A DNA stretch of 64,000 nucleotides from Botryllus schlosseri (taxonomy: Eukaryota), in contig CM119380.1 in the NCBI GenBank assembly GCA_051294905.1, positions 20,584,001 through 20,648,000 on the forward strand, given 5' to 3'. Positions within the stretch are counted from its first letter, which is position 1. Each line of letters opens with the position of its first letter. The translations under genes and the position numbers were made by a program. Of this stretch, positions 11,346 through 62,815 are shown in pieces. The notes below the pieces were generated by a model. That model searched no databases. It was not told where the DNA came from and saw only the letters and a program-made list of their open reading frames with translations.

Positions 11346-12202
11346 GTATGACGCATAGAGGCTCATTCTGCCCCCTTTATTCAGTTCTACCCCCTTTTCA
11401 TCTCGGCTGGCTACGCCCCTGGTCACGAGCAATCAGCATTGCCGACCGCCGGCATTGGATTCTTGAAATTGAAATGTCCCGCCAAGCATGTTGTATTTGG
11501 CCCCTTTTCAGCCAGTTTCCGGTGAATGATAAGATTTAAAGGAGCACAACATGGAGATACTTCCAAGCAAAACATCGTTGTATCTCTCAATTAGGCGTTC
11601 GTATTCGATAGTGGACCTCAAACCTCGCTACCAAAGCTAGTTTGCGCCACATAACTATGGGGTTGGTGCTCGCGTCATTTTAGGTGTTATCGACTCTCTT
11701 CGTATTCGGAATAAACGGTATCAAATGAACTGAACCGTGCCGCGTCCATAATTCAAAGCGATGCGTGCCCATGTAGACTTCGCAAAGAAAGTCAAGTACC
11801 GCCCACGATCATATCGATTTTTTTTTGCTGTGCCTCTGACGTCAGATGGTACCGTGTCGAGCGCAAGATTTAAGCCTCGTCGAGTGCCGGTGTTATTTTC
11901 TAGTAGGTCGCTAAACCGAGCGTCCTTCAGTGTCGGATTTAATACGCCGTGTTTCGCCGTAGCCTCCGGCGCCGCTTCATAGAACTGCCACGAACTGTGT
12001 TTATGCGTCAAGCGCATGACGATATCAGATATTGGCAATTGACACTATATGCGAGTTGTTGACACGCTCGTAGCTGCGTTGGATTAGGTGCTCGCATTAT
12101 CGGAGATCGTTGCAATTGAGTAGGTGGCAGGACTGGCAGAAATTATTGGTGATGCACCGCGTCTTAATGTCAGTGTTATTCATTTAGTTAACGTGATCAG
12201 TA

Positions 12203-13214
12203 ATGTTGATGCCTAAAGGCCATTTAGTGGCCATATACCAATCGCTGTTCGAAGACGGGGTTTGCGTAGCGCACAAATCCACTCGCGGTAACCACGAGAC
12301 TATCACGATAAACGGAGGACCTATTCCGAACCTGCACGTTGTCAAAGCGATGCAGTCTCTAGTATCGAAAGGGATTGTGAAGCAAACATTTTGCTGGAGA
12401 CATTATTACTGGACTCTGACCGATTCCGGGATTCAATACGTGAGAGAGTATCTGAATTTACCTCCTGAAGTGGTCCCGAGCACTTTGAGGCGAGGAGTTA
12501 AACCACGAGCAGGAATGGGGCGAGGTAGGGTACAGTCGGCGCAGAGTACCTCTGCAGCAGGCGACGGCAGAAATGTGTACAGATCAAAGACAGAACCCGC
12601 TAGACCCGCGTATGGCCGTGGCCGGGATAAGATCGCAGAGGCCGGTGCCGGCCCCAACGCCACGTTCGGATTCAGTCCACGCGAACCGACCATGGAATTT
12701 CGCGGCGGATACCGGAAGAATGACAAGCGAGAGCAAAGCGCGCCGAATGGATACGACCCATCGTACAATGGATCGTGGAGGCGTGTAGACAAAGCCAGCG
12801 AAGCGTCTAATAAGGTAGTTACCGAGAGAGGGGCCGTCAATAGAACCCAGTTCAATCAAGTCAGCAGCAAGGATTCAACTGCAGATAACCAGAACGAATA
12901 TACTGCTCAATTTAGCCGTTCGGAAACTCTGTTATCAGGACAAGGGGTAGCGGCGACTGTAGTGCAGCACCGCGAGGTTCACACTTCCGTCACTGAGACA
13001 CGAGAACGTTATGTAAAGCATACGGAATCGCTACAATTTTCGAGTCCGCGCGAAGAGGAAAATTCCGGTCAGGGATCGGAGAATCACAGGTGGGATAAAG
13101 AAGAGAACGAGGAGGAGGACGAGGAGGACATGGATAGATGGAGGTCCAGGAGGGCGGCTTCCGAAAATCCGGATTTCGAGCACGGCTTCGAATCGAAAAT
13201 AGACGAGGGCAGAG
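12203..13214 (+). CDS. PLEC: Alternative first exon with plectin/S10 (RPS10-like) domain; plectin isoform-1 type
   Basis: [63 protein letters not shown]; donor AGAG|gttaag, phase 1, joins exon 2 to give [11 protein letters not shown]. Confidence 0.85.
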
Positions 13215-28200: not shown

Positions 28201-31200
28201 GGAATCAATGATCACTCAATCCGTATTTCAGACAGCTAGCAAATTGCAATGACGTAATCATGCCTCATACTTCGAAAAGGCAACTTGACTTGAAATGTGA
28301 CTTGACTCGTGACTTGACTTGACTTGACTCGACTTGACTCGAGCCACCTCCAAAAATCGAGTGACTTGACTTGACTCGAGTCACCTTTGAAAATCGATTG
28401 ACTTGACTTGACTCGAGTCAAAATGTGCAATGACTCGGAATGACTCGTGACTCGAAGGTAGTGACTTGATCCCAACACTGCTCTATGCTATTTTATCATT
28501 TGCGTCGTCCGAATTATTGGTGATTTGATCTCCGTAGAGCGCCGTGGTCGAGCTGAAAACCATCGAGCCGCAGTACGCTGAGACTCGTGACGGCTCGAAA
28601 ATGATTTTGGAAGATAAGGATTGCACGGCACCTTCTAAGGACGAACTCGGTCAGCAGCTCGAAACCGTTGAAAAGAAATGGGACCGGACCTTGAGCGTTT
28701 CCACGCTTTATTTCGATAAGTATGTTGAGATTGTTGAAAATGTTTAGTTTGTGAGTTTGTGTTATTCTCTTTCAAGTTAACTTGTATGCTTGTGTTGTCA
28801 ACAATGACAAAAAACTTTTGTTGAATTTCGCAGGTTGAAGGTGGTTTACTTGGTTTTGCAATCCACGAGAGCGGCAGAAGACGTACTGTCATATGTCGAA
28901 TCGAAAATCGAGGAGAACAAGGATATTCCAGACGATTCTGAAAGTTTGAAGAAACAGCAAGCCGTATTCCAGGTATTGCGGAAAATCTTTGGTGTCATGG
29001 TGCTAAATTGCACAGCAGTGCTATGTATCAATTTGAAACTCTATTGATTACACAATATTGTACCAACTGTGTCATATTAGCAATTGAATTAGGTTGTGAC
29101 ACTACTACGACCTGTAAAAACAGTCTATAAAATGAGAATTCTAGGCATATGCGTCTCCCAGCACTGTACTGCTGTAGTACGGTGATGCGATCATGATATT
29201 GCAAAGCTTGATATACTGCCTTTGTTTCATGTTTCTCTTGTAATACAGAATTACTGCGCTCAGACCAATGTAAGTATCGTACTGAGATAACGTGCGAACA
29301 CCATCATATCATTTCATAGGGTGTGACTATTTTAGTGATTGTGAATGGTGCTTATGGTTCTGTTATAAATAACCGGTGTCATGAATTTCACATTGCATTC
29401 GTCATCTATACTTTAGCCATAAACCATACCCCTTTTTTGTAATGAATTATTCAGATGTGACAATGTTATGATATAGTGATTGTTTTCTTCATATTATATC
29501 CTATGATCATTTCAAAGTGCTATGGATAATTGATAATGCTCATTATGATTGCCTGCATTATGCAATAAGCCGTCTTACATATTAGGTTGGATTTTGTCCT
29601 ATCTCAACCATAGAGTAAATGCAAGCCATTGACGTATAACCTCATTTATCCAACAGTTTTCTTTTCAAGTACAAAAGAGCCATGATTTGAAAAAATAAGT
29701 TTAATATATTCCTCAGATTTGTTATTATATCGACACAGCATTGATAGCAATCCTCCAGTCCAAAACTTGAGAAATATGTTTATGTGTCATATCTCATGCA
29801 TTAATACTAGTAGAATTTGAAAAGAAACATTCTAATAAAAGCTTAGATGTCTCTGCAACTGATAACATCGCTAATAAATATGAACAGCGATAGAAATCCG
29901 GGGGTATTCCAAGTTTATGGTTGTACTGATATGGTATGGCTATACAGATGCTCAAAATCCTGACACAGGTGTCACAGTACTCTTAAAAATCAATATTAGC
30001 ATGGATCTGTTTGAAACATGAACATATAACTCATCGAATGCCGCATCTAAACCCCGACTCCTCTCCGACAATTGGTGGCATGTTCACTAAAACCACCGTT
30101 TGCTGTCATAAAAATGATTTGCGTCAACTAGGGCCTGCGAGACACGCTGGAAGAAAAGGAACCCGTGGTCACCAGCTTGCAAAGGGACGCGGCACAAGCA
30201 AAAGAATTGGGTGCAAGGGTGGTTAAAGTGGCTGATACTCCAGAATCTCCGGTTACCGAAGATGTGGACGCTGCCAAATACACGGATGATGTCCAATCGA
30301 TCGTGGAAAGATGGCAGCTCAGCAAATCAGCTGTGGACGAGAGGTAAAGGCTGATTTTAGAGTTCGAATAGATAGAGTGAAAAAAGCCTCTTTAGGAAGT
30401 TGATTAATAAAAACTTAGGCCAGCAACTTCACAACTCCCAGAAAAGGCAAACAGCTCCCGGGCCCCAAACTATTGGTGCAGACATATTCATTGATATTCT
30501 ATTTGGAATTTTGTGTGATCTAAGTTTCTACATGATAGGGCCAATGGGGCAACATAACTGCACAATAAGAAAGAATTCAATAACCTCGGTACCATCTATG
30601 GTTGATCAAGTCAAATATTTAGTGTTTTAAATCAACTTACTGTCAGTCTTGTGTACGGTACCTGTTGTTAGTAAAGTCTAACATCTCAAAGTATATGTTG
30701 TATGCATCCGATCAAGTAAAATACTTGAACACTCGGCAATAAAAATGCTTTACAATGATAAGAAATGGATGAAAATGGATGAAACTCACAACTGTACAAT
30801 GTACATGTAGACAATTATATCACCATGCTTACTGTCCAAAAATATTTTCCAGACTCGCGAAATTCAATGAGCTGTTGCCCAGAGCGGAACAAAGTAAGTC
30901 ATAATTTTCTTTTTACAAGAATAACTCGATACTTACTGACTCCTTTTGCAGGCGAGGCCGAAGAACAACGGGCCCAATCACTTATCGACCGTCTCAAGAA
31001 GTTTCTGGAAACACTGGAGGGTATTGAGTCAAGCCAGCACGCTCAAATGGCCGTTTGGCTACGCAGGTCCGTCCCGGCTTTGGAGCAAGCCAAGGAGAGT
31101 CAGTCTGTGAGTGCTAATATAAGGTACGCTGTTCGATACGTTGAAGCTGACATTTTCTCTATTCAGGACGTCGTGAAACGCGTCAACAGTCTCAAGCCGG

Positions 31201-34200
31201 AGTATGACTCCCTACAATCCGTGGTTGTTAATTTTCTCAACGATGAAGCCACCGGTGCCGCGCCCAACTTGGGATCACTGCGCGACACATTGCATGAAGT
31301 GCAACAGAAATGGACTGATTTATGGCTTATCACGCACGTGTACCTCGAAAAGTATGCCCGAGATTACGGGTTGCCGAAACTTTCTCGGATTACAATTTAT
31401 TTATGCGTTTAGGATCACGGGATTGGTGTACACGCAAACCGCGCTTAACGAATGCGAGAAGACGGTGAACGAGTATGAAAAAATCATCGCGGACCGGTCG
31501 CATCCTACTTCGGATGTCGACACTTTGAGAATTCGAAATGAAGTGTTTCAGGTGGGACTGATTTTCACCCAGAATCTAATGGTTTTCTTTTGAAATTTGC
31601 AAATGTCAAATCAGTATCAGTAAGAAAAACATTTATCATTCACTGTTAATGTAGGGTTACCATAATTTGGAAATCTAAAAGAGCTTCTTGGAGGTACAGA
31701 ACTTCAATATACAATTAAATAGTATATTCATATTGAAATGAACCCGAATATTTTCGGCTGACACTCGTCAGGGGTAATCGTCAGCAACTAGTAGAGAATT
31801 GGAAAGAACATTGTATATCAACAATCGTATCACAAAATATGACGTCACCAGCATGAAATTTCGAATGAGAGAGCGTTCAATGTACTATTTTTAGGTGATA
31901 CACGAACTCCTTTTGTTGACAGAGTTTTGGTTGGTGTATTTTGATAAAAGTTGATTCCAAGGCACACAAATGGAATTGTGAACGGCCTCGACCTACGATT
32001 CGAAATCGGTCGTCTCGATAATTATTCGCACAAATCGATTTGTGCGAATAATTATCGAGACGACCGATTTCGAATCGTAGGTCGAGGCCGTTCACAATTC
32101 CATTTGTGTGCCTTGGAATCAACTTTTATCAAAATACACCAACCAAAACTCTGTCAACAAAAGGAGTTCGTGTATCACCTAAAAATAGTACATTGAACGC
32201 TCTCTCATTCGAAATTTCATGCTGGTGACGTCATATTTTGTGATACGATTGTTGATATACAATGTTCTTTCCAATTCTCTACTAGTTGCTGACGATTACC
32301 CCTGACGAGTGTCAGCCGAAAATATTCGGGTTCATTTCAATATGAATATACTATTTAATTGGAAATCTAAAAAGAGGACACTTTCTCAAAATTTTCAGAC
32401 TTGCGAAACCGGAGGAGAATTCTCAAAAATTGGTAAATTTTACCCCCTCAGTGGTCGGTTGACTAAAGAAAGTAAAAAAGTAAAAAATAGGTCAACTTTC
32501 TGCTCAGTGCTCCCGAAATACCCGCCAGAGCGTCACTTTGGTGCTGATATACGGCATCTCAGTCGGATTTTGCTATGTATATGACCAAAATTCTCAAAAG
32601 AGGACAAAATCTCAAAAAATCGGATATAAGGGCTTCCTCCGAGGACACTTTCAAAAAAGTCAAAAAAGAGGACAAATCCTCTTAAAAGAGGACGTATGGT
32701 AACCCTATGTTAATGCAAACACTGAGTACTCGTACAGATAGCGACTGTGTAATAATGCTTAGCAGCCCCTCAGTCGTTACAAAATCTGTACCAGATTCTC
32801 ATAGATGTGATTTATCCGTCTATCTAAATGTATAATTTAAAAAATTCCTGTCGACATATTACGGGTGTCATTGCATTATTCCTTTTAGGATTCATTGCTG
32901 TCTGGTTTATAATAATCTTGGATTTTATTGCGAACCATTGTAAAACCTGCAGTTATCCGTGTTGAAGCTTTTTGTGAATTTACTGACTTGGTGCACTTCA
33001 TACCGGATGCTACTATTCCTCAATAATCCCTGGGCAAACTGTTTCTCTCTTTAATTTGGTGACGTAAACTTTTTCGTTCCAACAGAGACTCGTCGGAGAC
33101 ATTCCTGTGCATGACGGGAATTTCGACTCGCTGGCCAAAAACTTGAATTCGACTTGCAACGTCGCCGGGCAACTTCCCAAGGAACTGGGCGAGAAATGCA
33201 ATTCGGATCTGGACGTGTACGCACAAGAGATTGAAGAATTGCAAAAGCGTTGGGACGACGTCAAGGCCAAACTGAACCAACTTGCCATAGATGTTGCCGC
33301 GCAACTGCCGTTGTTGGAAAAAGGTGATTACATTTACATTCATAGTTCTAAATTAACGGTGGAGCGTCAGGCTTCTGTGGCTGTGGGTTCAATCCCCGGG
33401 CGGTAAGATCGAAGACCAAATCAGTGAAACTGATATTACATTGCGCTCAGCATTTTCGGGTTAGCATCGAGGTGAGGTACAAGACTTAGAATGCCTTGTA
33501 AGGTTATTTCTGCACCTTCCTTGTTCACTGGCCACTGGAATGAATATGCACAAATCGTGTGTATGTGTATCATGAGTTCAAGTATATGCCGCAAAAACGC
33601 CAAAGGATAAAAATATAAAGCATTCTATTTCTTCTATTCTATCTTAACGGTCCTCAGACTTGAAAATCTAATTCACGATGAATTATTGACTCTAACCAGG
33701 GGTTCTTAGTCTATCATTGACCCCTAAATAAATGCAGCGTTTGCGTTGAATATTTCTGTCACCGTGAAATGGTGTGGCAATCAGCTACACACAACTTTGG
33801 AAATTCTGTTTCCACTACCAAATTAAGTAGCAATTGAGGTGAAGATGGTTCAAATGAGGTGGTTCATTGCTGAACACCGTTGAGCCGCACTATTCCAAAC
33901 ATGTAGGATATAAAGTCGACGCACATATCCAAATTCCATATTTGCGACAGTACCTTATACCTACTCCAATATTTTAGCGGCCGCCCAAGAAAAGGAATTA
34001 TCCGACCTACTGGCTAGAGTCAAAGCAATGCTGTCAGGGCTTGAATCGCTCGCGCAAGCGCAGAGTGCTCGTATGCAAGTCGGCTTACCAGCTGAGTCAA
34101 AGGGCTTGGAAAAATGCCTTGAACAACAAAAGGTATGTTGTAGATAAAAATTGCATTAGTCAAATGCTGTAGCCCTCATCAAATTGATTTTTTATTCAGG

Positions 34201-40200: not shown

Positions 40201-43200
40201 ATAAGAGATATATTGCGATTTTGCAAGTGGCCGCCTCTGATGAATTGCAAAAAGTATGCGTCTCCTGTACCGAATCTACTTCTTGAACTACTATGTCGGG
40301 CAATTGTGAAACCTTTCGCTTTTTACTTCCACTTGAAGTAGTTTTAACGTGATTTTGAAATATCTGCTGGTAGTAGGAATTGAAATTTGCGACAATGTCT
40401 CTACTTCTCTCTGATTAGCACACTGACTGCCTTGACAACCTCTGAGCATCGATTATACTTTGTAGAAAATCGGGAAAGATTTGGACGAAGACAAGCCAAA
40501 TATCGATAAGCTGGCCGCGATCGCGAAAGAATTCGACGAAACCGCGAAGCAGTACGACGACACTGCAGATAAGTTCGAACCGGGTGATGCCACTCTTGCG
40601 TCTAAGAAGAAGGGAGGAAAAACAACCATCACACGCATTATCACTGTTGAGGTGCGGGGATTGTTGGTGTTACCCCGTTTTTGTGGCGTTACTTGCCGTT
40701 TTGAGCACCTCCTAGTTTTGCCAATTAAGCTATTGAAGAGATTATAACTTTACACTGACATCACTTTCGCAAAATGTATTTTAAGGCGAAATTATTTACT
40801 TTCATACGTGTTGGATTTTGGAAAGTGTGAAGTTTTTTTTTTTTAAAGGCTTGCATCACGTTTGCCACTGAAATAATCATGACAACCGAATGAACTAGCC
40901 CCCGTGTCATTGGAACTGAATATTTACTCAGAAAGTGCACTAATTTGCAATGTCTGCTTTGTGTTGGCCGCAATGGTTCATTGTTCAATTCGAATGTAGT
41001 CACCTCCGATTAACTACTTTTAAAGCACTTACTTTAGTACCTTGAGACCATTCACTTTGTATTTCTACTTGTAATTAAGTAGAAATTTACAGTATTACTC
41101 CCACTTCTACCTACTTAGTATCAATGCTGAATACTTTGTTTACCTCTGTTAGTAGTGTGGGATGCCCATTGTTCGACAGTGTGCAGAACGCACCAGCGCT
41201 TTGTACTGGTATTAATCAATTGTGTTTTACATATTTTTTTAATTGTCACGGCAGGTGACGACCATCACGCGCAAGTACGATAAGTTGAAGAACTTAATTT
41301 CCGAGAGAGTGGACCAGTACACCATCGAGTACGACAAGGCCAAAGATAGAGAGGTGACGATTTCTCGCATATCTACATACGTAGACTTAGCTCAAAAACT
41401 GATCTGCTGTAGTTTAGGCCACAGGTGTATTATAGTACTTCATATTGGTTGACATCGTGTCGCCTGTTAGCATTATCATTCTAAAATTCTCGATAGTTAA
41501 TGAACGTATTACCGTGTTAATTTGACATCATTAAGCTCGGTATATATGCCTGCAACGTAGACACCATGGTAGGCGTAGAATATAGCTAAAATTTCTTTAT
41601 TATATGAGTGCCTTCACAGCCATTTTTGATGCATTGCCTTGTTTAACGCGCATGCGCGTCACGCGAAAAGGTTTAGATTGGACAGGGGCGCCGTGTTGGA
41701 TTATACAGAAGCCGTTGATCGTGCAGTTCAATCTAATCGCATGTCCGATGCACACGCGAATTCGCTGTGGCGTACGTTTATATGTTGCGTTACTGTGTAT
41801 GTATGTATGCCGACGGTCCCCGTGAATAGTAACCAGCTACTGCGTGTTACTTGTCACAATGCACTCCGGCGGAAGTGCAATCAGGGTCATCCCGGACTCG
41901 AGTCCAAGTCGCACTTATAGTATGCATGGCTTTGCGTTGCTGTTTTCCTGTCGAGCTGTGCGTTGCTGTGCGGAGAATCATGCTGGGAGACGGGTGACGC
42001 AATTGGAATGCTGCGCGTAATTCCGGTGTATCTTCAATTCTCTCTTATTTGCACCCTTTACTAATACTGCTCGTTTTTATATCGCGCGCATAGTACGTCT
42101 GATAATAATTCGACTGGTGTATTGACGGGATGAGTAAAACCGGAGTTGGACACCAAGGAATTTTTAAGCGTTTTCAAATTAGAATAGAATTAGAATTATA
42201 GTAACACATTTTTTTTTAATTTGATTTAAATTCGCATTAATGAATTCACAGAAACTTGGAGATTAAATCGGATATCGAATTAGGGAGAAATACAACAAAA
42301 ATGATATCAAGTCATGAGTCCATTCTTGTAAGCACGAGAATTCGCAAATGTGTGTACAACAAGCTTGCCTCGTTTGACACGACACAGATCTCCTATGGCA
42401 TTTTCGGTAAAATGATAAATGAGACTCGAATCAAAATTTGATCATAGAAACATATCAAAATTAAATTATTGAAGTCTTAAAATTCGGAAATTGAATTGAA
42501 GAAATACAGCAAAATCAAGCTCAGTGCATATATAGTCAGAGTTCATACTCATATCCGAATGGCAAATGTCTGTGCAACAAGCTTGGCACGTTTCGCACAG
42601 CACATTTATCCTGTGACATTTTCGCTATTACCCGAATTTAGAATCGAATTGAAATTAGAGCTTGGAAACATTTCACAAATTAGATTAGAATTAGATTACC
42701 CGCATTTCGAATCAATTAGTCTGATTCGGCAACTAGGATGATCTATTTGTTCAAGTCTGATTAAAACGACATGTTTTGAGGAGTATCAATTCCGTTGGTA
42801 AGAAGTGTGAAATGACCGGGACGAATTATTATCAGAACCTTTCCACCGCGGTATACCCGCCGGGCGTGATGCTGCTGCTCGCTTTAATTGCTTGCCTTTG
42901 TATATCCACCTGCACGTTTTGATATACCTTGAGCTATGTGTCGAGTCGTGGGACACGAGGAGTATATGCGTTAGGATTTTGCGCGCGTGCCGGCTGCAGA
43001 TAGGTACTACCGCGTCCGTGGCTCTTGCGGTGTTATGTTTGGTATGGCGAGACGGTTGGAATGCGGCGTTTTCGAGGACTTTGGTGAGATTCATGCTTAT
43101 TGGTGAGTAACCGTTAACAGTTTTGTGTTTTTATCTTGCGTCTTCTGCTGCTGCCTGATCTTTTTCTGTCCGAACTCTTGTCGCGTGTGTCCTTGGCGTG

Positions 43201-46200
43201 TGGCTTTTGCGCGATTGCTTTTGGGCCTGTGTTGGTTAGGTTGGATTTGATAGCCGCGCTGACATCATGAGCAGTCTGGTTTGAATCGTATAACATAGTT
43301 AAGCCGCTAATGTAAACCAACACGGAATTCACTAGTGCGCAGATTGGAAAGGTCAATCATAATGGGAGAACATAATTTGATTTGCATTCTATAGTTCAAT
43401 ATTCGAAATTTTTCGTTTGGCATCATATACGTGATCGCAAAATTCTGCGTGAAGCGTCCGATTTGCCTTTAATTTGACGTATTGTTAGGGCTATTTCACG
43501 ATGAATAATGAATATCAACGAACCAACAATTACGTGTCGAATCGCTAGGTCCTGGTCATCGAGTGTAATTTGACTATTCTTGAATCAGTATGATAGATGA
43601 CAACTTAGTAGGTGTACTGTGTGTAGGGTATCTAATCGCTAAATCTATTTTCCTGCAATGCTCCGAGCGCTGTAGATTGTTACCTACATTTCAGCTGCAC
43701 TCTTATCTGTTATCGTCTCTTAATTTTTCATGGTACCTCAATTTTTCATTGTCTCCACTTTATGACACTGCGTAATTTATCGCGGTTCAAGACCATCACA
43801 CTATTTCGCAATCACATTTTAATGACTTGGTGCTCATTTGTAGCATTTGCGACAAAATGCGATCGTAGCAGATTGCCTAACAATCATTCATGCATTACAA
43901 CTATTCTTTCTACTAATACCACTGAGCTATCTATATATCTACGTAGTTCAGTGACTAATACCGGTACTTTGCTGTAATTTGTGGCGTAGACACTGATTTC
44001 TTGTAGACGGGTGTCAACCACGAGATGAATTTGGTGATACCGCTTTTGTGTCCGAGACTGATTTGAAATCGTTCTCGTAACGTACTGGTGATCTTCTACT
44101 CCGATTCATGACTTCACTGTGTCAATGCGCCTCATCCAATACTGCCGAGGCGGCCCGTTTTCCGGCAGAAATGGAGATCGAGAAAAGCGAAATTTATTCT
44201 AGCTTCGTAGATTTGCATTGGTGTAGAACTAACGCACGCCACGGTGGCCGTGATTTCCCCTCTCCTGAATATGTGGTGGCTTATCCGAACCAAGTCAACC
44301 CTCGTACAGAATCTATAGTCGTTGCGTTGGTTTCTGTTACCTATCGCGGTTCAGCGACAAAATCTGCCCTCGGCATCGCCAAACGAAGGCACACATCTCG
44401 TGGTCGATGGCCCTCGATTGATAGTCGGGTTCAATGCATGGTGATTGAACTTTCGTAAACTTCACGTCAGTGGATGCGCGCTTTCATATTAGAGTGTTTT
44501 CGTGAATCATGCATGCGCACAATTGAAGACTTTAGACCGGGATTAAAACAGATGTCGCACTTCTTAAGTTTCGAACCGTGACACAGGCTGACCGCGCCTT
44601 TTGCTGTGTCACTTGTTGTATAATAAGTTGTAACCTATCAGCGTGTGGAACATAACTGGTTTGTGATGATTTTCACACTTCGCTACAAGTCTAAGCCGTT
44701 CGGTAATTGCTATTTCAATGCCGCGCATCGCGTCAATAGAAGCCTCGCTGCGATGTCCTTTCTTCTGGTTTTAACTGTGAAGTTGGCGTAGATATGCTTA
44801 CGCAGCCGAGAGAAGTGTCATTTTCTCTTTTGCTGTCTTGAATGGCGGGCGCCGTAATATCGTGCGTAACCGCGTAATTGTCCGTGTAAATAATGTCAGG
44901 GTTATGATACTGCCGGGTGTTTGATATGGACGATTCGGACGGAGACGGGTCGGTTTTTAGCGCGTCTAGTCTGTGCTGCTGCTGCTGCCTTACCACCGAT
45001 TTAGTAGCCGGGTGGAAGCGAAGAAAATTGAGGAACAGGCGACTGAAATTGGTAAATTAACAGGCTAATAACAGGCTTCAATCGTAACCTTGACCAGATT
45101 AATTCAAGTGAAGGCGTGGATGGATGAGGCGCTATTGACTTTTTTCTCGATTTCTCTCGTTTGCGTGCGCTCATTGTTATTATTACGTCACTCACTGTGA
45201 CGTCACAACGGTTCCACAGGAAGCGGCGAGGCGCGCGGAGGAAGAGAAGAACGCGAAAACCACGACTATCACGGAGATTACCACCACCACGACTACTGTT
45301 AAAAAGAAATCCAGGCGGGACATCTATTTCCTGACTTCCTTCAGGAAGGAAGCTAGTCTGCTCGACTTGCAAGATGCGGGAATTGTTACCGAGGAAACTG
45401 CCCAGCAATTGGAATGTGACGCCATTCCTAAGGACGAGGTAAACATCACCGTTTCCCGCTGAATTTTATTTAACCACACGATTTAAGTTCAATTACGTCC
45501 GATTACCTTTGTTCTACCACGTTAATGCTGGTATTACCAAGAAATAGACAATCGTCTTTTATTAATGTACATTGGATGCAGGTATAGGTAGTAGGTAATT
45601 AGGTATACTGAGCAAAATACCTTTACTATGTTCTGTGTGGTCGCTAGTTTCATACACAATCGCCCATGTTAAAGTACTGCCATAGTTAATCTACACATCG
45701 AGATATCCTTATAAATGTCTGTTTGAGGTGCTTTTTAACCCATACGATAGGTAGATATTCTAATAATCAATATACTGATGTAATCATAGTGAATTTTAGT
45801 GACATTGCTCATGATATTTAGGTTGAACAAAGCCTGAAACGATATTTGTCAGGGGACCAACCAATATCTGGTGTTATCATACAAAAGGCGGACAACAAGG
45901 TCATGTCTGTCAACGAAGCGATGATCCGTGGTATTATCATGGCAGGAACAGGGTAAGTCTCGTGTTACCCTATCATTATCCTATTCTTGGGGTGCCGAAA
46001 TGTTGATGCAGGTGTTTTTGAGTTGACTCGCTCTATTGACTTCTGAGCATATGTGTATGATATTTTAAGAGACTCAGGTTGTATGTGGTATTTATTTTGA
46101 ATTGCGTTTGGAGATCATATTCAAGTACTTTAAAAATCAATTTTTATTGTGTTTAGAAATACGTTTGTGTGTTCAGGCTTGGTTTGCTGGAAGCGCAAGC

Positions 46201-49200
46201 GGCCTGTGGCAGCATGATTGATCCTTTGACCGGAGAACTGATGAGTGTCAACGATGCCATAGAGAAAGGACTGGTTGAAGAGAAATACGAGGACGGTTTG
46301 AGGCGTGCAGGAGCAGCCGTTTTCGGCTTTGAAGATCCTGTCACTCACAAAACGCTCTCCTTGTATGAGGCTATGAAAAAGAGTTACGTCGTCGAATCGC
46401 ATGGCATAAGGTAATTGTTGCGAATAATTTTCAGTTTTGAGTGTTTTCCTGTTACATGGGGTGTCATTAAGCTAAATGGGTATATGAACCAGGGTTGGAA
46501 TTTGGCCATATTTTCCTACGGTTAGTCGTGAAAAACGTATATTACGGTTTCACTGAAACTGAATTACCCATTACGTCCATATTGTTTGGCAAAAATGCAC
46601 AGATTATACACCGAAGACTCCAAACAACTTTGTTACTGTCAATTCACACACAGTTGTGACTTATTATTGTAATATATAACGTGTAAATGTACCAATATGC
46701 TCATTTTGTTTTTAATTATATACTATGGGTATATACTACCTTTGTTGTGGAAATACCCATGGTTAATGAAACATTACATTTATAGAATTACAGTTCCGTT
46801 TATGGTGACCCTGATATGGACTAAAATTACTGGAAATATTTGATTTAGAATTGATTACTGGTATCAATTATGCATTTTTCTGTAGTAACGTCCTTCGTTG
46901 CAATGTTGGTTATAAATCTCATGAACTAGTGGTTATCAACGATATTGATTAGAACCAGCACATTCACTGAACCAGTTAGGCTTTACTCGATAAAAAGGAA
47001 TATTGAAGATCAGGTTAGGCCCTATTGACCATTTAGCCTACTACTTTGGAAGTTACAGCAGTGAGATTGACCCTTTGATTTGTTATAAATACTGGTGTAG
47101 TATTTTCTACGTGTCCAAGTGTGAATCTAAATTGTTTCTATTATGAGTTTACAACTATTTTCCAGATTACTCGAAGCCCAGATTGCCACCGGAGGCCTGA
47201 TCGACCCGAGGGCTAACCACCGTGTACCAATTTCTGTCGCTTACCGTAGAGGCTTGTTCGACGAAAGGATGAACGAAATATTAGAAGACCCATCTGACGA
47301 CACTAAGGGGTTTTTCGATCCAGACACCAAGGTAATGGTTTTTTTGTTTTGTTATAGGTGTGGTTTGTGAAGGTATAAAATATCTTGATGCAGTTCGTAC
47401 CGCGTGTACACCCACTTGGTAAACAAAACACGGTATTGTGCGTTTTTTGAGTAAATTGTGAAAAAAAATTTGAACCTGTATTTGCTTTTATTATTTGTTT
47501 TTTTACCGCCACCCATGTGCGTTTGGCGTTCCAAGCATTCCAATGCTTGCACAGTAAATACTCTGAGGTCAGCAGTCTGTTGAATTATAGACTTCTAATT
47601 ACGTGACAGATGGTTGACCTATTTCGGAATTCATTTTTTACGATTTCTAGCCACATTGTTTCAATTGCACAATATTCAACTGAGACCATGGAATATTCTG
47701 ATTTCCTTATTTTCCGGAATTAGTCTATGGCCGGGTGGCTACCGCATTCCGCCATCACATGGCATAGCTCATTCATAATCCAGTCCTGCCTGATTGGTAG
47801 ATGTGGGCAATGACAGTTAGGAGCTGCATAAGCTTTTTTGGCTTGGATGATGTGCATTCCCATATGGTGCTATGATGGTATGTCATCAATGATTCCGATT
47901 TGGTTATCCTTGCCATAATGTAGTTGTTCGAATATTCGAGAGGCAAAGGGTATGCTGTAGTTTTGTTTGATGCCTCAACCTCGTAAACATTTCAGATAGA
48001 GTTTTTACGGTTATAAATGTTTAATCCCCTATTGAAGCTATGTGTACGGAATGACCATGAACGTTGACCAGTTATGTATCTGACCAATCCTATTTTTTCA
48101 GAAAAACAACACCTACCTCGAACTGATGTCGAAAAGTACAGTTGACCCTGCTACAGGCGTCAGGCTCTTGCCCTTCACAAGAGACGTGGACTTGGCAAGA
48201 GTGAATATGGATCTTGCTGAATTGATAGCCTCGAAACGTAGCCGGAAGAATATCAAGTTAGTAAACCTATCCCTGATGTAAAAACTCACTGTCGTTGCTG
48301 TATTCTGTGATGTATCCTGTATCAATTGGTTATCGATTACTCCAATTAACCTAACTCGCATAATGATGATAATGATTGTAGCAATCGCATAATGCTGTCT
48401 GTGCAATTCTGAAAGACATATGAATCTTTGCCTCACAAAGAGTGCACAAAAACTCATTTGTCACTGAACATTACTACAGTAAAACAAGAAGTACAGATTC
48501 AATCTCTGATAATAATTAATAATGCAGAACATTAATAAAATACAACCCTTGTAATAACAGAACGACGCATAGAAAAAATACTGTGGTAGCATTGAGCTAA
48601 AGATATCCCTAGAATTTACGTTGACTGTGGTTGAATTTGATCTGGGATTTTCTGAGTTCTATTGCACAGATCAGAAAGTAAATGTACATAATTTGTCACA
48701 AGCCTGCTTCCGAAATCCAACGGCGTCAATTGTTTGTTAGTTATTGGAATTAGGATGAATCCAGAAATTGAATCCCGAACAAAAAAATGGCCGAAGTCCA
48801 AGTCGCAAAACTGCTCCTCAACAAGCATTGCCTTTACAGATTCAAGACCGGATTCCGACGTGATGCTAGCTTGCTCGATATATTTGACGCTGGTCTGATC
48901 ACCGAGGAACAAGTGGTTGGTCTCGAGGAAGGCGCCATCCAGGAGGAAGACTTAGCGTCTCAACTGAGACAATATCTTTTCGGAGGCGAAGAGCCCATCG
49001 CCGGAGTCATCCTGCAAGCAACTGGTACCTTGATAGATGCCCTCTTTTGGATGATATTCAATTAATCTGAACCGAATCTCAGGTGAGAAGCTGTCCATCA
49101 ACGACGCTGTGCAGCGTGGCATTTTGAAACGGGGCACCGGAATTGAGCTTCTGGAAGCGCAGGCAGCCACGGGAAACGTGATCGACCCCAAGACGGCGTC

Positions 49201-58200: not shown

Positions 58201-60090
58201 AACATCTTCCTTTGAACGCGGTATCTAAACCACCTTGGCGTGTACGACATATTTCCTCCATGACATCGGCTGACAACTATATAAAGTTTCGATCTCTGCG
58301 TGACTGCTGGAGCGTGATGTGTTGGTGGAAATTTCAATACATTGCAGCTCCATTACGGTAGCATTCTGAAGCAAACAGCTACTTCCAATATTTTTTTTTT
58401 CATTTTACCCTTCAATTTCAGACCACATCACTTTTAGAGTGCAGTGCCCCTTTAAAGTATCATTTTTGTGTAGCTTATGATGAAAGTATGGCCACTATGC
58501 TCATTTCTTAACCTGCAAACTCAGTGAATTTCTGAATAACAGAAGCATGTTTTACGAGGGTATTGATTTTTCTCAATTTTGAGGTGATTAGTACTCATAA
58601 ATGACATTCAATACCAGTTCAAGTATTGATATGAAACTCTGCTTCAGTACCAGCAAGGATTGTGATTTTCAAAGCAGAAGTAGACTGATAGCCTTGTCTC
58701 AAAGGTGATGATGTTTTTTAGTAACTCTGCGGCTGTTTCATTAGACTGACATTACACCGTAATTGTGATATCAAGTCAAGTTTAACCCCAAACATAAGCA
58801 TAGCTAGGATGATAAATTTGGGTGGGCAGATGAAAATTTGGGCAAATATCATTAGTCCACATGGAAATTCTCCTCAGCGAGTGCAAACTTTGCATATTGC
58901 AACCAGCAATCAAGAATTTCTCACATTATTGCTGCATATTTGCAGGGGGCATTGTCGATTACCGCACCGGTTCGCGTATCACCATCGACGAGGCCTTGGA
59001 GCGGCAATGGATCGACCGTAGGCAAGCCGATAAACTCGCTGATTTGAGACGATACGCTCGTTCCATAGTCGATCTGCGGACCAACATGTTGGTAAGTGCA
59101 ACAATTCGATTCCTTTTTTAAATTAATTTGAAGCCTGCGAAATTTTCAATGTTATTTTTCTTGATTTTCAGTTGACTTATCCGGAAGCACTCGAGAAATC
59201 CACTCTCGACTCCAAGACCGGTTTGAAGGTTATGGAAGCTTTGCCGAGAGCCGAGAGGAGTGCGCGGGTAGCAGGCGGCTTGACCATACACGCCGGCTCC
59301 TTGCATTCCTCCTTGTCGAGCTCGCTTGCCAGTTCGAGGGGTAAGAGGAACCTTATGTAACCCGTAAGGATACAAGCGTGTCCATACAGTTCCCTCCCAG
59401 TTTGTCCTTTTGTGCTGTTGGAAAGAAATCTGTTTTCAGCAATTAACTTTGCTTAAAATCCTACCACCGGTATACAGTCTGCAGTCTTATAAGCCGTAAT
59501 TCTGTTGATTTGGGGATATGTAATCTGCATTTGTGATGCGTTGGATTGCTAGTCATTTTATGCACCTCACACCTTCATCCTATACCCTCTCCAGAATCTG
59601 GAATAATTACTTGTTTATATATAATATATCTAAATATAAGATTGCATTATAAGACTGCGATATTTTTTTGTGATAGAGGAGCCTCTTGAAGGTATATAAC
59701 GTCAATTTACAATTGAATAATGTATTCATGTTAAAATAACGTAAATAATGGAAAATGTGAAAAATCCTCCATGTTTATATAGACAATTTTGTATTTTATG
59801 GTAAATAACGGTCATCGAGCTTCGATAACCGTGGCAGTGAGTCAGCTTCTGCTAATGTGCCGGATTAGTATTCATTTATTTTTATTGTATTTATTTGGAT
59901 CGGAAAATATACTCTTTCGTTTATACACCTCATGCATTATTACTCCAGTCTCCGTAGTAGTCGGCCGTATTTTTGTATAGAAATGGAACAAGTGTCTTCC
60001 CTTGTTGCAGCTGAAAGCCCGATTGGCACCCCAAAAAGACGAGGTAGCTTCGACGACGACACTGGGTCTCTCACATCACCGAGAAGATAA
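12203..60090 (+). CDS. PLEC: Plectin-like plakin, 68-exon isoform starting at the S10 exon (~4081 aa); co-orthologue of plectin/dystonin/MACF1
   Basis: All exons traced by eye with GT-AG boundaries and matching phases; summed CDS is 12,246 nt and divisible by 3. Domain order: S10, CH1-CH2, plakin domain/SH3, spectrin repeats, 5 plakin-repeat domains, RRGSFD tail. Symbol denotes closest architecture, not proven 1:1 orthology. Confidence 0.9.
14436..18174 (+). CDS. PLEC: Actin-binding domain (CH1+CH2) exons: 14436-14497, 14648-14737, 16598-16675, 17189-17281, 17363-17523, 17679-17794, 18068-18174
   Basis: [16 protein letters not shown]; [20 protein letters not shown]; [22 protein letters not shown]; [19 protein letters not shown]; [13 protein letters not shown]; [23 protein letters not shown]. 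All have canonical splice sites. Confidence 0.97.
15971..16100 (-). repeat. Degenerate copy of the Penelope/hammerhead tail
   Basis: cttcttggagg..ggggtaatcgtcagcaactag; core mutated to CTGGCGA. Confidence 0.75.
19101..26783 (+). CDS. PLEC: Plakin-domain N-terminal spectrin repeats and SH3 exons: 19101-19456, 19991-20084, 20609-20757, 21183-21354, 21427-21555, 22326-22409, 22472-22633, 23190-23390, 23997-24125, 25081-25230, 25698-25979, 26603-26783
   Basis: Helical spectrin-repeat sequence; SH3 signature [11 protein letters not shown]|[26 protein letters not shown]; phases are consistent. Confidence 0.9.
21577..21960 (-). repeat. Two tandem copies of the Penelope/hammerhead tail (21577-~21720; 21791-~21960)
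   Basis: tcgtcaggggtaatcgtcagcaact motif occurs twice; the first copy stops at about the predicted cleavage site and the second has a mutated core (CTGACCA..GAAG). Confidence 0.75.
24377..24388 (+). CDS. Candidate 12-nt microexon (REIT) in a phase-0 intron of the plakin domain
   Basis: ctgac branch-like motif, pyrimidine tract, catcag|AGAGAAATCACG|gtaagt; frame-preserving. Confidence 0.45.
25267..25407. repeat. ~71-bp direct tandem duplication
   Basis: gatt(t/c)gtacaattgcggtattt(a/g)gttgtattaaggttaagcaagcgttttcatattttgtgtcgaatt occurs twice. Confidence 0.85.
26030..26578. repeat. AGTA/AGTAG-rich dispersed repeat family (probable non-autonomous DNA transposon); other copies near 20120, 35730, 36470, 40260, 41010, 49270, 50330, 52380
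   Basis: Recurrent agtagaagta / tactcaagta / gtggtca motifs in both orientations; boundaries approximate. Confidence 0.55.
26821..26872. repeat. Minisatellite (ttattgcgttgtg)~4
   Basis: Direct reading of the short intron. Confidence 0.75.
26882..30893 (+). CDS. SR7-SR8 cassette copy 1: 26882-27036, 28538-28719, 28834-28972, 30132-30343, 30853-30893
   Basis: [15 protein letters not shown] resembles plectin GAQEESRCQRCISEL; exon sizes 155/182/139/212+41. Confidence 0.88.
27505..28480. mobile_element. hAT-like MITE with subterminal GACTT/GACTC pentamer arrays
   Basis: TIRs cagtgttggga / tcccaacactg; perfect 8-bp TSD CTCTATGC at 27497-27504 and 28481-28488; related end near 63415. Confidence 0.88.
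30952..33323 (+). CDS. SR7-SR8 cassette copy 2: 30952-31106, 31167-31351, 31413-31551, 33086-33323
   Basis: Exon sizes 155/185/139/238 with the same phases; [15 protein letters not shown]|ITGL motif. Confidence 0.88.
31742..31785 (-). ncRNA. Minimal hammerhead motif, mirror copy in the left arm of the palindrome
   Basis: Exact reverse complement of 32288-32331. Confidence 0.7.
32288..32331 (+). ncRNA. Minimal type-I hammerhead ribozyme motif (sense to host gene)
   Basis: ACCC-CTGACGA-G[TGTCAGC]C-GAAA-ATAT-TC-GGGT: stem I ACCC/GGGT, palindromic loop III, predicted cut after 32327; upstream GCTGAC is complementary to loop II GTCAGC. Confidence 0.7.
33978..35698 (+). CDS. SR7-SR8 cassette copy 3: 33978-34132, 34200-34381, 34435-34576, 35464-35698
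   Basis: Exon sizes 155/182/142/235; [15 protein letters not shown]|IKVL motif. Confidence 0.88.
34826..35026 (-). pseudogene. hAT transposase C-terminal dimerisation-domain remnant
   Basis: [37 protein letters not shown] fits the hATC P.T...VER.FS motif. Confidence 0.65.
36215..38219 (+). CDS. SR7-SR8 cassette copy 4: 36215-36369, 37027-37211, 37281-37422, 38006-38219
   Basis: Exon sizes 155/185/142/214; [15 protein letters not shown]|VKRV motif. Confidence 0.88.
38286..39738 (+). CDS. SR7-SR8 cassette copy 5: 38286-38440, 39099-39280, 39345-39483, 39545-39738
   Basis: Exon sizes 155/182/139/194; [15 protein letters not shown]|LDAL motif. Confidence 0.88.
39798..41353 (+). CDS. PLEC: End of plakin domain (SR9): 39798-39963, 40466-40651, 41255-41353; last exon ends in phase 0 (YDKAKDRE)
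   Basis: [19 protein letters not shown] and [26 protein letters not shown] correspond to the pre-rod exons of plectin/dystonin. Confidence 0.85.
44926..45051 (+). CDS. Candidate internal alternative first exon: [42 protein letters not shown]
   Basis: gatATGG, first ATG after the in-frame TGA at 44905; 42 codons ending TTG|gtaaat in phase 0, compatible with the acceptor at 45220. Confidence 0.5.
45220..48256 (+). CDS. PLEC: Plakin-repeat domain 1: 45220-45438, 45822-45952, 46177-46410, 47166-47331, 48102-48256
   Basis: [18 protein letters not shown]; [22 protein letters not shown]; [21 protein letters not shown]. Confidence 0.93.
46490..46813. mobile_element. Possible small hAT-like insertion
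   Basis: cagggt..accctg ends; flanks atatgaac / atatggac (7 of 8 match). Confidence 0.4.
48840..51175 (+). CDS. PLEC: Plakin-repeat domain 2 and basic spacer: 48840-49024, 49083-49232, 49763-49962, 50028-50167, 50885-51017, 51075-51175
   Basis: [16 protein letters not shown]; [14 protein letters not shown]; [24 protein letters not shown]. Confidence 0.93.
51858..54095 (+). CDS. PLEC: Plakin-repeat domain 3: 51858-52119, 52850-52977, 53688-54095
   Basis: [17 protein letters not shown]; [21 protein letters not shown]; [16 protein letters not shown]. Confidence 0.93.
54857..56539 (+). CDS. PLEC: Plakin-repeat domain 4 plus IF-binding linker: 54857-55074, 55201-55394, 55459-55641, 55865-56102, 56331-56539
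   Basis: Linker [30 protein letters not shown] resembles plectin KRRVVIVDPETGKEMSVYEAYRKGLID. Confidence 0.93.
57333..60090 (+). CDS. PLEC: C-type plakin-repeat domain and tail: 57333-57506, 57577-57814, 58946-59091, 59172-59340, 60011-60090 (stop)
   Basis: GPIGGILD; [14 protein letters not shown]; [14 protein letters not shown]; terminal [26 protein letters not shown] carries the plectin/desmoplakin RRGSFD motif. Confidence 0.9.
57939..58451. mobile_element. TTAA-flanked foldback MITE (Kolobok/ANGEL-like) with ~210-bp imperfect arms
   Basis: ttaa|agggacactgcactctaaaa ... ttttagagtgcagtgcccct|ttaa with long internal complementarity. Confidence 0.8.
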
Positions 60091-61859: not shown

Positions 61860-62092
61860 GACAAATATGCGGCCCTCCAAGGGCAGCTGGATGCTGACAC
61901 AGAAGCATTGTGTCTCCACGAAGAAGCGCTGGAAGCTGTTGCCGGGCCCGATGATTTTCTGAATGACATCCCAACTCTGAAGAAATTGGTCGATGAGCAA
62001 AGGTCGCTCGTAAGTGACATTGCAGAATCGACTCCCCGCATCGAAAAGACGTGCAACGATGTAGATCAGTTTCTGGATGCTACTAACGACAG
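61860..62092 (+). CDS. Spectrin-repeat exon downstream of the plectin stop codon (spectraplakin-type branch; continues beyond window)
   Basis: ttag|GAC...AG|gtaagg, phase 0 to 2; DKYAALQGQLDADTEALCLHEEALEAVAGPDDFLNDIPTLKKLVDEQRSLVSDIAESTPRIEKTCNDVDQFLDATNDR shows a spectrin-like heptad pattern. Confidence 0.75.
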
Positions 62093-62671
62093 GTAAGGAG
62101 CGTGGAGCACTGGTGTTGGGGGGACTTATCCTTTGAAAAGTAGTAGCGAAAACTTGTGCCATGCGTCTCCATGACAATGAAGTAATATAGGCGCATACGT
62201 ATTGAGACTAAATATATCAATCAGCATAGATTCAAGTCATATATAAAGCAGGCATGTCAAACATATGGCCCGGATCAGTATTGACTATGTGCAAACCACA
62301 AGTCGCTACCGAATGTCTATCTAAGCTCTAAATGAAAATACACCAAATCCCTAATATTTCATGACTCTGTATAGAGCAGCAATTGATACAGATGCTCCCA
62401 TGCTAATTACTAACAGGTCAGCGATAATCTTACCTCTTCAATGCAATCATCATTAATGGCAAGCTTTTCATGTCACACCAGCACTGGGATTTCCAAAATC
62501 ATAACGAGACTCATAAAGGAGAAATATGCTATGACGTGCAATGATAATGCAAGATTGGGGGAAAATGTGGAATAGTCTGTGCTCACAAATTGAATAATCT
62601 GGTTTCACATTAAGAGACATCGTATATAGTTGATATTCGAAAGAGCCTATATTTTTCATTTCTATGCATAA

Positions 62672-62815
62672 GAGCTTCTTGGAGGTACAGAACTTCAATA
62701 TACAATTAAATAGTATATTCATATTGAAATGAACCCGAATATTTTCGGCTGACACTCGTCAGGGGTAATCGTCAGCAACTAGTAGAGAATTGGAAAGAAC
62801 ATTGTATATCAACAA
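62672..62815 (-). mobile_element. Short Penelope-like 3' fragment with intact hammerhead motif (62733-62776)
   Basis: Appears identical to 31681-31826; TSD tctatgcataa on both sides. Confidence 0.8.

What the first reader, a model, noticed from the sequence alone, without database searches (positions are those of the whole stretch)
44926..45438. Hidden internal first exon (CCCCC + polybasic) predicting a membrane-anchored, epiplakin-like isoform
Seen: a 42-codon exon absent from the ORF track, with good Kozak context. It encodes [42 protein letters not shown] and has a phase-0 donor 168 nt upstream of the first plakin-repeat exon. It lies where the rod exon would be. Known: Cys clusters next to basic stretches are typical S-palmitoylation/membrane-targeting signals, and epiplakin consists only of plakin-repeat domains. 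Inference: an internal promoter could make a lipid-anchored intermediate-filament tether lacking the actin-binding and plakin domains, an architecture I do not recognise from vertebrate plakins.
Basis: partly seen in the sequence, partly recalled or inferred. Interest (0 to 1): 0.8.

Follow-up and report, generated by a model that had tools for sequence, protein, structure and literature searches.

The report
Conserved cysteine-rich alternative start exon in plakin gene
A 42-codon reading frame in an intron of a plectin/spectraplakin gene is conserved at the protein level in a distant relative, so it is probably a real alternative start that puts a likely fat-anchored cysteine/basic head directly on the filament-binding repeats; no RNA evidence was available.

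Summary
ATG 44926 opens 42 codons, including (TGC)5 = Cys5 followed by a polybasic run. They end at a phase-0 GT donor (45052), 168 nt before the phase-0 exon 45220-45438, which opens the plakin-repeat branch.

An ORF of this size is not unusual on its own: 92 ATG ORFs of 44 codons or more lie on this strand of the window. Conservation is what makes it significant. In a related genome (L001) a 38-codon ATG ORF lies 451 nt upstream of the orthologous exon. It aligns without gaps from the ATG, shares DG, F, C..CCLT.D and [W/Y]KRR, and also ends at a phase-0 GTA donor. Its cysteine codons are not a microsatellite. Composition-preserving shuffles reach the observed score in 1 of 20000 trials. Nine of the 14 identical residues use different codons, and the flanking DNA is unalignable.

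A third, equally distant genome (L003-5) has no detectable counterpart.

The best reading is an alternative first coding exon giving a Cys-cluster/polybasic, probably S-acylated, head on a repeat-only isoform that ends at its own stop (60088-60090). Transcription, the splice junction and acylation are untested. Known precedents are MACF1-4 and BPAG1a3, so this is a new variant of a known kind. First-stage notes flag other acylation-type starts further along this gene; I could not check them.

The parts
44926..45051 (+). Candidate alternative first coding exon: 42 codons with an acidic start, Cys5, CLT.D, and W-KRR plus a basic run
   Evidence: Sequence and ORF. Protein-level conservation with L001:2516-2629.
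44974..44988 (+). (TGC)5 run encoding the five cysteines
   Evidence: TRF reports 5.0 copies at 100% match. The orthologous cluster in L001 is TGT TGT TTG GGT TGT TGC, which is not a repeat.
44905..44907 (+). In-frame TGA that closes the frame 18 nt upstream of the ATG; no AG lies between the two
   Evidence: the stop-free segment starts at 44908.
45052..45219 (+). Predicted 168-nt intron (GTAAAT...CCACAG)
   Evidence: No nucleotide similarity to the 451-nt L001 counterpart above shuffled controls.
45220..45438 (+). First exon of the plakin-repeat branch (73 codons, phase 0/0): a T-rich linker plus the module start
   Evidence: It is 53% identical to L001:3081-3299 and 45% identical to L003:10103-10243.
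41255..41353 (+). Upstream constitutive exon (33 codons, phase 0/0) that can join 45220 in frame
   Evidence: sequence. Conserved in L003:6011-6190 with E 7e-15.
40466..40651 (+). Upstream exon (62 codons) ending in phase 0 with donor GAG|GTGCGG
   Evidence: Weak match to L003:5724-5849.
45822..45952 (+). Plakin-repeat exon with conserved intron positions
   Evidence: 66% amino-acid identity to L001:3513-3644.
46177..46411 (+). Plakin-repeat exon
   Evidence: Pfam Plectin match, E 4e-18. 66% amino-acid identity to both L001 and L003.
60011..60090 (+). Last exon of the plakin-repeat branch, with a plectin-like RRGSFDDD tail and a TAA stop at 60088-60090

Best explanation
The sequence 44926-45051 is a real alternative first coding exon of a plectin/spectraplakin-type gene, and it is kept by selection. 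A transcript that starts (or is trans-spliced) just upstream would splice 45051>45220. It would encode a 42-residue head fused directly to the plakin-repeat branch: at least 14 Pfam plectin-repeat matches between 46.1 and 59.1 kb, with its own stop at 60088-60090. That product lacks the RPS10-like head, the calponin-homology actin-binding domain and the spectrin-repeat plakin domain encoded upstream. The head carries a cysteine cluster followed by an aromatic residue, KRR and a basic patch. I infer that the cysteines are S-acylated and that the basic patch binds acidic lipids, so the intermediate-filament-binding repeats would be held at a membrane. Shown here: the ORF, the splice-compatible phases and the protein-level conservation. 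Inferred: transcription, the splice junction, acylation and membrane targeting.
For: 1. Anatomy. The ATG is in a purine(-3)/G(+4) context, the frame is closed upstream, a phase-0 donor follows, and the next exon is phase 0 and lies 168 nt away.
2. Ortholog. L001 (Logan assembly, collinear with exon 2 and three plakin-repeat exons, intron positions conserved) has an ATG ORF at 2516-2629 in context gctaccATGA. It ends AGG|GTATAT in phase 0, 451 nt before its exon 2.
3. Alignment. The two heads align without gaps from the ATG. Identical positions are M1, D5, G6, F11, C17, C20, C21, L22, T23, D25, K31, R32, R33 and R38, with W/Y at 30. The BLOSUM62 score is 60. Shuffles that keep composition reach it 1/20000 times against the L001 peptide and 0/2000 times against all three frames of the 3080 nt upstream of the L001 exon 2.
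4. Protein-level, frame-specific conservation. Nine of the 14 identical residues use different codons. Nucleotide identity is only 44%. The other two frames contain stops. The 500 nt upstream and the short intron show no similarity above shuffles. In a six-frame comparison only known exons and this ORF give collinear hits.
5. Donors. GTAAAT and GTATAT fall within the range of confirmed donors of this gene, which include GTAAAC, GTAATT and GTTAAG.
6. Repeats. The region is not a repeat within the window.
7. Precedents. Spectraplakin heads with lipidation motifs and an ABD-less isoform that starts with plectin repeats are both described.
Against: No RNA evidence of any kind was reachable. Length-limited protein searches with the head and with exon 2 found nothing. 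The exhaustive representative search found only unspliced genomic ORFs. Only one of two equally distant relatives has the head. L003-5 show no homolog by profile search; they have only an unrelated Cys-rich ORF that lacks a basic run and a donor. In both species the unspliced frame stops two codons after the donor (VN*, VY*), so a stand-alone small ORF is not excluded. Both donors lack G at +5. There are five upstream ATGs within 200 nt in the window, three of them in frame though all terminated before the ATG. There is no local CpG or promoter signature: CpG o/e is 1.3-1.4 here against 1.07 for the whole window. Acylation is inferred from the motif only.
Confidence: 0.55

Rival explanations
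1. It is a stand-alone small ORF nested in the intron: a micropeptide of 44 aa here and 40 aa in L001. It is conserved in its own right and is not spliced to the plakin repeats.
For: In both species the frame reads two more codons past the proposed donor and then stops (GTA AAT TAA here, GTA TAT TGA in L001). These 9-10 nt are more alike than the rest of the exon. Both donors lack G at +5.
Against: The window's 168-nt interval before exon 2 has no AATAAA or ATTAAA, so a transcript that starts here would run into exon 2. GTA after a G is also what a donor site requires. The phase matches exon 2 in both species. A constant position immediately upstream of the same exon across deep divergence is most simply explained by use as that exon's alternative partner.
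Confidence: 0.15
2. It is a real alternative first exon, but the Cys/basic head is not a lipid anchor. It could be a metal-binding or protein-interaction motif, a redox-sensitive segment or a targeting signal of another kind. It may also splice to a downstream exon other than 45220.
For: The conserved residues go beyond Cys and basic (DG, F11, CLT.D, W/Y30), which suggests a specific partner. The three exons checked just upstream and at this junction (40466-40651, 41255-41353, 45220-45438) are phase 0/0, so exon skipping among them stays in frame. No acylation predictor or experiment was available.
Against: Cysteine clusters next to basic patches near an N-terminus are the classic context for S-acylation, as in GAP-43, PSD-95 and SNAP-25 (textbook knowledge, not tested here). 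The nearest acceptor is the most likely partner.
Confidence: 0.2
3. It is a chance intronic ORF built around a TGC microsatellite, and the L001 match is a coincidence.
For: ATG ORFs of this length occur about once per 650 nt per strand. (TGC)5 is a perfect microsatellite. The third genome has no counterpart. Much of the alignment score comes from cysteines.
Against: Composition-preserving shuffles almost never reach the score (1/20000 and 0/2000). The ATGs align, the lengths are similar, the strand and order are the same, and both have phase-0 donors. The L001 Cys codons are non-repetitive. The flanks are unalignable.
Confidence: 0.07

Closest known systems
BPAG1a3 / dystonin isoform-3 N-terminal head (and other dystonin lead sequences)
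   Same: An alternative first exon of a spectraplakin gives the protein a short head with a lipidation motif that is thought to direct it to membranes (PMC3352950; bioRxiv 10.1101/122010).
   Different: That head is a myristoylation-type head at the extreme 5' end of the gene and precedes the CH2 and plakin domains. Here residue 2 is D (S in L001), so N-myristoylation is excluded. The motif is an internal Cys cluster plus a basic patch, and the exon lies deep inside the gene, directly before the plakin repeats.
MACF1-4 isoform
   Same: An internal start gives a product without an actin-binding domain that begins with plectin repeats (PMC4914211).
   Different: The review cited here mentions no lipidation motif for MACF1-4, and it continues into the spectrin-repeat rod, EF hands and GAR domain. 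The branch here has its own stop and a plectin-like tail.
Epiplakin
   Same: The predicted product consists essentially of plakin-repeat domains only (epiplakin's make-up is from general knowledge).
   Different: Epiplakin is a separate gene with no lipid-anchor head, and I recall it being encoded by one large exon. Here the repeats are split into many exons within a plectin/spectraplakin locus, and the product would end with a plectin-type RRGSFDDD tail.
VAB-10A / plectin-type branch of a spectraplakin locus
   Same: A single locus has a plakin-repeat-terminated branch as well as further downstream exons (a stop-free ORF at 61860-62093 that reads like a spectrin repeat, with no Pfam match), as in vab-10 (PMC3352950). 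There is also an RPS10-like first exon, as in plectin (Pfam S10_plectin).
   Different: VAB-10A and VAB-10B share one 5' start. The exon discussed here would add an internal start for the repeat branch alone.
S-acylated Cys-cluster/polybasic membrane-targeting motifs (GAP-43, PSD-95, SNAP-25, cysteine-string protein)
   Same: A cluster of 4-5 cysteines within about 20 residues of the N-terminus, with an adjacent basic patch.
   Different: There is no sequence homology to these proteins, the resemblance is recalled from general knowledge, and acylation has not been tested.

Membership tests
Plakin family (plakin-repeat-bearing cytolinker gene) | Plectin/plakin repeats (Pfam PF00681) encoded downstream on the same strand | tested here: met
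   Thirteen ORF segments between 46157 and 59118 match PF00681 above the gathering score, giving 14 matched stretches in all.
Plakin family (plakin-repeat-bearing cytolinker gene) | An N-terminal actin-binding (CH) domain and a spectrin-repeat plakin domain in the same locus | tested here: inconclusive
   CH-like and spectrin-like ORF segments are visible in translations at about 14.6 kb, 17.3 kb and 19-41 kb. The segments I scanned (30783-31409, 40466-40660, 61860-62093) gave no Pfam match. The RPS10/plectin domain did match.
Alternative first coding exon | A start codon with the frame closed upstream and no acceptor that could make it an in-frame internal exon | tested here: met
   TGA at 44905-44907 and no AG up to the ATG.
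Alternative first coding exon | A donor in a phase compatible with the next exon | tested here: met
   Phase-0 donors TTG|GTAAAT (window) and AGG|GTATAT (L001). The exon 2 acceptors are phase 0 in both.
Alternative first coding exon | Conservation of the reading frame in related genomes | tested here: met
   Met in L001/L002. Not detected in L003-5.
Alternative first coding exon | A transcription start or spliced-leader site, and junction reads | not testable with these tools
   No transcript data could be reached. Searches returned no spliced products.
S-acylated (palmitoylated) membrane-targeting head | A cysteine cluster with an adjacent basic or hydrophobic context | tested here: met
   Cys17-21 here and Cys16, 17, 20 and 21 in L001, followed by [W/Y]KRR and further basic residues.
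S-acylated (palmitoylated) membrane-targeting head | Demonstrated thioester acylation and membrane localisation | not testable with these tools
   Requires acyl-RAC/ABE and imaging.
N-myristoylated spectraplakin head (BPAG1a3 type) | Glycine at position 2 | tested here: not met
   Residue 2 is D in the window and S in L001. No MG..C start occurs at or near this exon; the single regex hit in the window (30544) is unrelated.
Epiplakin | A protein made only of plakin-repeat domains, from a separate gene with one large coding exon | tested here: not met
   The repeat-only product is only predicted. The gene structure differs, with many small exons inside a plectin/spectraplakin locus.

The most novel reading that the evidence does not exclude
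The head may be one of several lipid-anchor start exons spread along this single giant locus, each feeding a different body: the plakin-repeat branch here, and, according to unchecked first-stage notes, a giant repeat exon and the spectrin rod further downstream. The gene would then make a set of membrane-tethered cytolinkers without actin-binding heads. This particular product would be a palmitoylated, repeat-only intermediate-filament tether conserved across deeply diverged lineages.
Probability: 0.3. Interest if true: 0.65.

Novelty: new variant of a known kind. Interest (0 to 1): 0.5.

Why it matters
Plakins normally reach membranes through their plakin domain, which binds integrins or cadherin-associated proteins. 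A lipid-anchored, repeat-only isoform would be a direct and possibly reversible way to tie intermediate filaments to a membrane. It would extend the idea of swappable heads, known from plectin and dystonin 5' ends, to an internal promoter. It also shows that short, unannotated first exons can be recovered from raw genomic assemblies by protein-level conservation alone. The prediction is easy to test with junction PCR, a head-GFP fusion and acyl-exchange chemistry.

Tried and rejected
1. The word-indexed homology searches with the 42-aa head and with exon 2 returned no candidates. A search with a plakin-repeat exon returned one fragment, whose 1.2-kb contig was too short and had no DNA available.
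2. The metagenome scan with an exon-2 alignment only re-found the L003 contig.
3. A two-sequence profile of the head found no further copy in the window or in L003-5.
4. The Cys-rich ORF at L003:9633-9725, about 330 nt upstream of that exon 2, was considered as a diverged counterpart. I rejected it because it has no basic run, no in-phase donor and no alignment.
5. A CpG observed/expected profile, tried as a promoter proxy, is uninformative because the whole window is not CpG-depleted.
6. Nucleotide alignment of the upstream 500 nt and of the short intron between species shows nothing above shuffles.
7. ESM Atlas look-alikes of the head gave only low scores and no lead.
8. The sequencing-run accessions of L001/L002 were not found in the paper library, and cluster look-ups gave no names, so the related organisms remain unidentified.
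9. A codon-usage test was not run, because 42 codons give too little power.

Full report
**What is there.** The + strand of the window carries a large plectin/spectraplakin-type gene.
- It has an RPS10-like first exon (Pfam S10_plectin).
- CH-like and spectrin-like exons are visible in the six-frame translation.
- A long series of plectin-repeat exons lies between about 45.2 and 59.3 kb: 13 segments match Pfam PF00681, with 14 matched stretches.
- That branch ends with a plectin-like tail (..[11 protein letters not shown]..) and a TAA stop at 60088-60090.
- A further stop-free ORF that reads like a spectrin repeat (no Pfam match) lies at 61860-62093.

- ATG 44926 sits in context tttgatATGG and opens 42 codons.
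- These include a perfect (TGC)5 at 44974-44988 and a basic run.
- The donor is TTG|GTAAAT at 45052, followed by a 168-nt intron.
- Exon 45220-45438 follows (73 codons, phase 0/0).
- The frame is closed by TGA at 44905-44907 with no AG before the ATG. If the ORF is coding, it can therefore only be a first coding exon.

Exon 45220 is also an ordinary internal exon.
- Exon 40466-40651 ends in phase 0 (GAG|GTGCGG).
- A 33-codon exon at 41255-41353 is phase 0/0. It is conserved in a third genome at E 7e-15.
- The chain 40651>41255..41353>45220 is therefore in frame.
- The candidate lies in the 3.9-kb intron 41354-45219.

**Is the ORF more than chance?** Not on its own. The window has 92 (+) and 100 (-) ATG ORFs of at least 44 codons, and the Cys run is a microsatellite. 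The test that matters is conservation.

**Finding relatives.**
- Length-limited homology searches found nothing.
- The exhaustive representative search with exon 2 returned three short proteins. Two of them are unspliced genomic ORFs spanning the orthologous exon.
- Their contigs were fetched: L001/L002 (Logan assemblies, 8.7 and 3.3 kb) and L003-L005 (contigs in three JGI metagenomes).
- L001 is collinear with the window. Exon 2 is 53% identical and three following plakin-repeat exons are 66-80% identical, with the intron positions I checked conserved.
- For the L003 group the 40466-type and 41255-type exons, exon 2 and two following plakin-repeat exons are collinear.
- On the three exons compared, the three genomes are about equally distant from each other (45-66% amino-acid identity). 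Introns are unalignable.

**The key result.** In L001 an ATG in context gctaccATGA lies 451 nt upstream of exon 2 and opens 38 codons (L001:2516-2629). The ORF ends AGG|GTATAT in phase 0.
- The two peptides align end to end without a gap, starting at the ATG.
- Identical positions are M1, D5, G6, F11, C17, C20, C21, L22, T23, D25, K31, R32, R33 and R38. Position 30 is W or Y.
- The L001 cysteine codons are TGT TGT TTG GGT TGT TGC, which is not a repeat. The Cys cluster is therefore ancestral, and the TGC run in the window is a later homogenisation.
- The alignment score is 60 (BLOSUM62). Composition-preserving shuffles reach it 1/20000 times against the L001 peptide and 0/2000 times against all three frames of the 3080 nt upstream of the L001 exon 2.
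- Conservation is at the protein level and in one frame only. Nine of the 14 identical residues use different codons, nucleotide identity is 44%, and the other two frames contain stops.
- The 500 nt upstream and the short intron show no similarity above shuffles.
- In a six-frame comparison of 40.4-47.5 kb with L001, the only collinear hits are known exons and this ORF.
- L002, from an independent sequencing run, has the identical sequence.
- The segment is not repeated elsewhere in the window.

**Limits.**
- The L003-5 genomes have no detectable counterpart. They have a Cys-rich ATG ORF about 330 nt upstream of their exon 2, but it lacks a basic run and an in-phase donor, and I treat it as unrelated or decayed.
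- No transcript evidence could be reached.
- Both donors lack G at +5. Confirmed donors in this gene are equally loose, for example GTAAAC, GTAATT and GTTAAG.
- In both species the unspliced frame stops two codons after the donor, so a stand-alone 44/40-residue ORF cannot be excluded. However, the window's 168-nt interval has no canonical poly(A) signal.
- CpG content gives no promoter signal.

**Mechanism.**
- Shown: a conserved start exon that is phase-compatible with the first exon of the repeat branch.
- Inferred: a transcript starting or trans-spliced just upstream splices 45051>45220. The product is a head plus plakin repeats only, ending at 60090, without the actin-binding and plakin domains.
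- Also inferred: the cysteine cluster is S-acylated, and the [W/Y]KRR-basic patch helps bind acidic membranes. This would tether the repeats, which bind intermediate filaments in other plakins (PMC3352950), to a membrane.
- N-myristoylation is excluded because residue 2 is D or S.

**Comparison with known systems.**
- Alternative heads are a hallmark of plakins. BPAG1a3 has a conserved myristoylation motif, and dystonin lead sequences contain potential myristoylation/palmitoylation sites.
- MACF1-4 has no actin-binding domain and begins with plectin repeats.
- vab-10 has alternative plakin-repeat and spectrin 3' branches.
- The new element here is the combination: an internal start exon with a Cys-cluster/polybasic motif placed directly before a self-terminating repeat branch.
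- A library search for palmitoylated plakins found no such case.

**Other notes in the scan.** First-stage notes report two further acylation-type starts downstream in the same gene, outside this window. I could not read or test them. Other agents' notes mention gene families shared with sea squirts and amphioxus, which I take as a hint that the genome is a tunicate or a near relative. That would fit the fast divergence and the possibility of spliced-leader trans-splicing, but I did not verify it.

**Verdict.**
- The exon is probably real (about 0.9 that it is under coding selection).
- It is probably an alternative first exon of the repeat branch (about 0.55 for the full statement including lipidation).
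- It is a new variant of a known kind and of moderate interest.

Noticed in passing
window 41255-41353 (+): A 33-codon phase-0/0 exon ([13 protein letters not shown]...) lies in the same large intron. It is strongly conserved in L003:6011-6190 (E 7e-15). It carries the same T-T-I-T motif as the end of exon 40466-40651 and the linker in exon 45220.
   Followed up: partly
window 12197-13216 (+): A long open frame begins with a full RPS10-like domain (Pfam S10_plectin, E 6e-34). This is the domain known from the first exon of some plectin isoforms, so it supports plectin affinity of the locus and is not an oddity.
   Followed up: partly
window 59172-59340 and 60011-60090 (+): The plakin-repeat branch ends in a serine-rich segment and a plectin-like [11 protein letters not shown] tail with a TAA stop at 60088-60090. 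About 1.8 kb further on, a stop-free ORF that reads like a spectrin repeat (61860-62093, no Pfam match) suggests alternative 3' branches, as in vab-10.
   Followed up: partly
window 8261-10810 (-): ORFs for a THAP-domain, P-element-like transposase lie on the opposite strand, apparently inside an intron of the plakin gene.
   Followed up: no
window 31880-32193, 32306-32581 (+) and 62471-62758 (-): The same 82-residue ORF is read on both strands at 31880-32125 and 31948-32193, which indicates a palindrome. Another ORF is repeated at 32306-32581 (+) and 62471-62758 (-). These are mobile-element copies in introns.
   Followed up: no
L003:9633-9725 (also in L004 and L005): A Cys-rich ATG ORF (8 Cys in 30 residues) lies about 330 nt upstream of the exon-2 ortholog in the third genome. 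It has no basic run and no in-phase donor. It may be chance or a decayed head.
   Followed up: partly
L001:2503-2515: An acceptor-like site, ctttgtAG, lies 5 nt before the L001 start codon. In the window a gtcAG lies at 44895-44899, 26 nt before the ATG. Both are compatible with a spliced-leader or 5'-UTR-exon acceptor. Not tested.
   Followed up: no
window 45220, 48772, 51811, 54834 (+): Exon-2-like module starts recur about every 3 kb. Each has a basic/T-rich linker followed by F.TG[FY]RR.ASL.DL..AG..TEE. This indicates tandem duplication of multi-exon plakin-repeat modules.
   Followed up: partly
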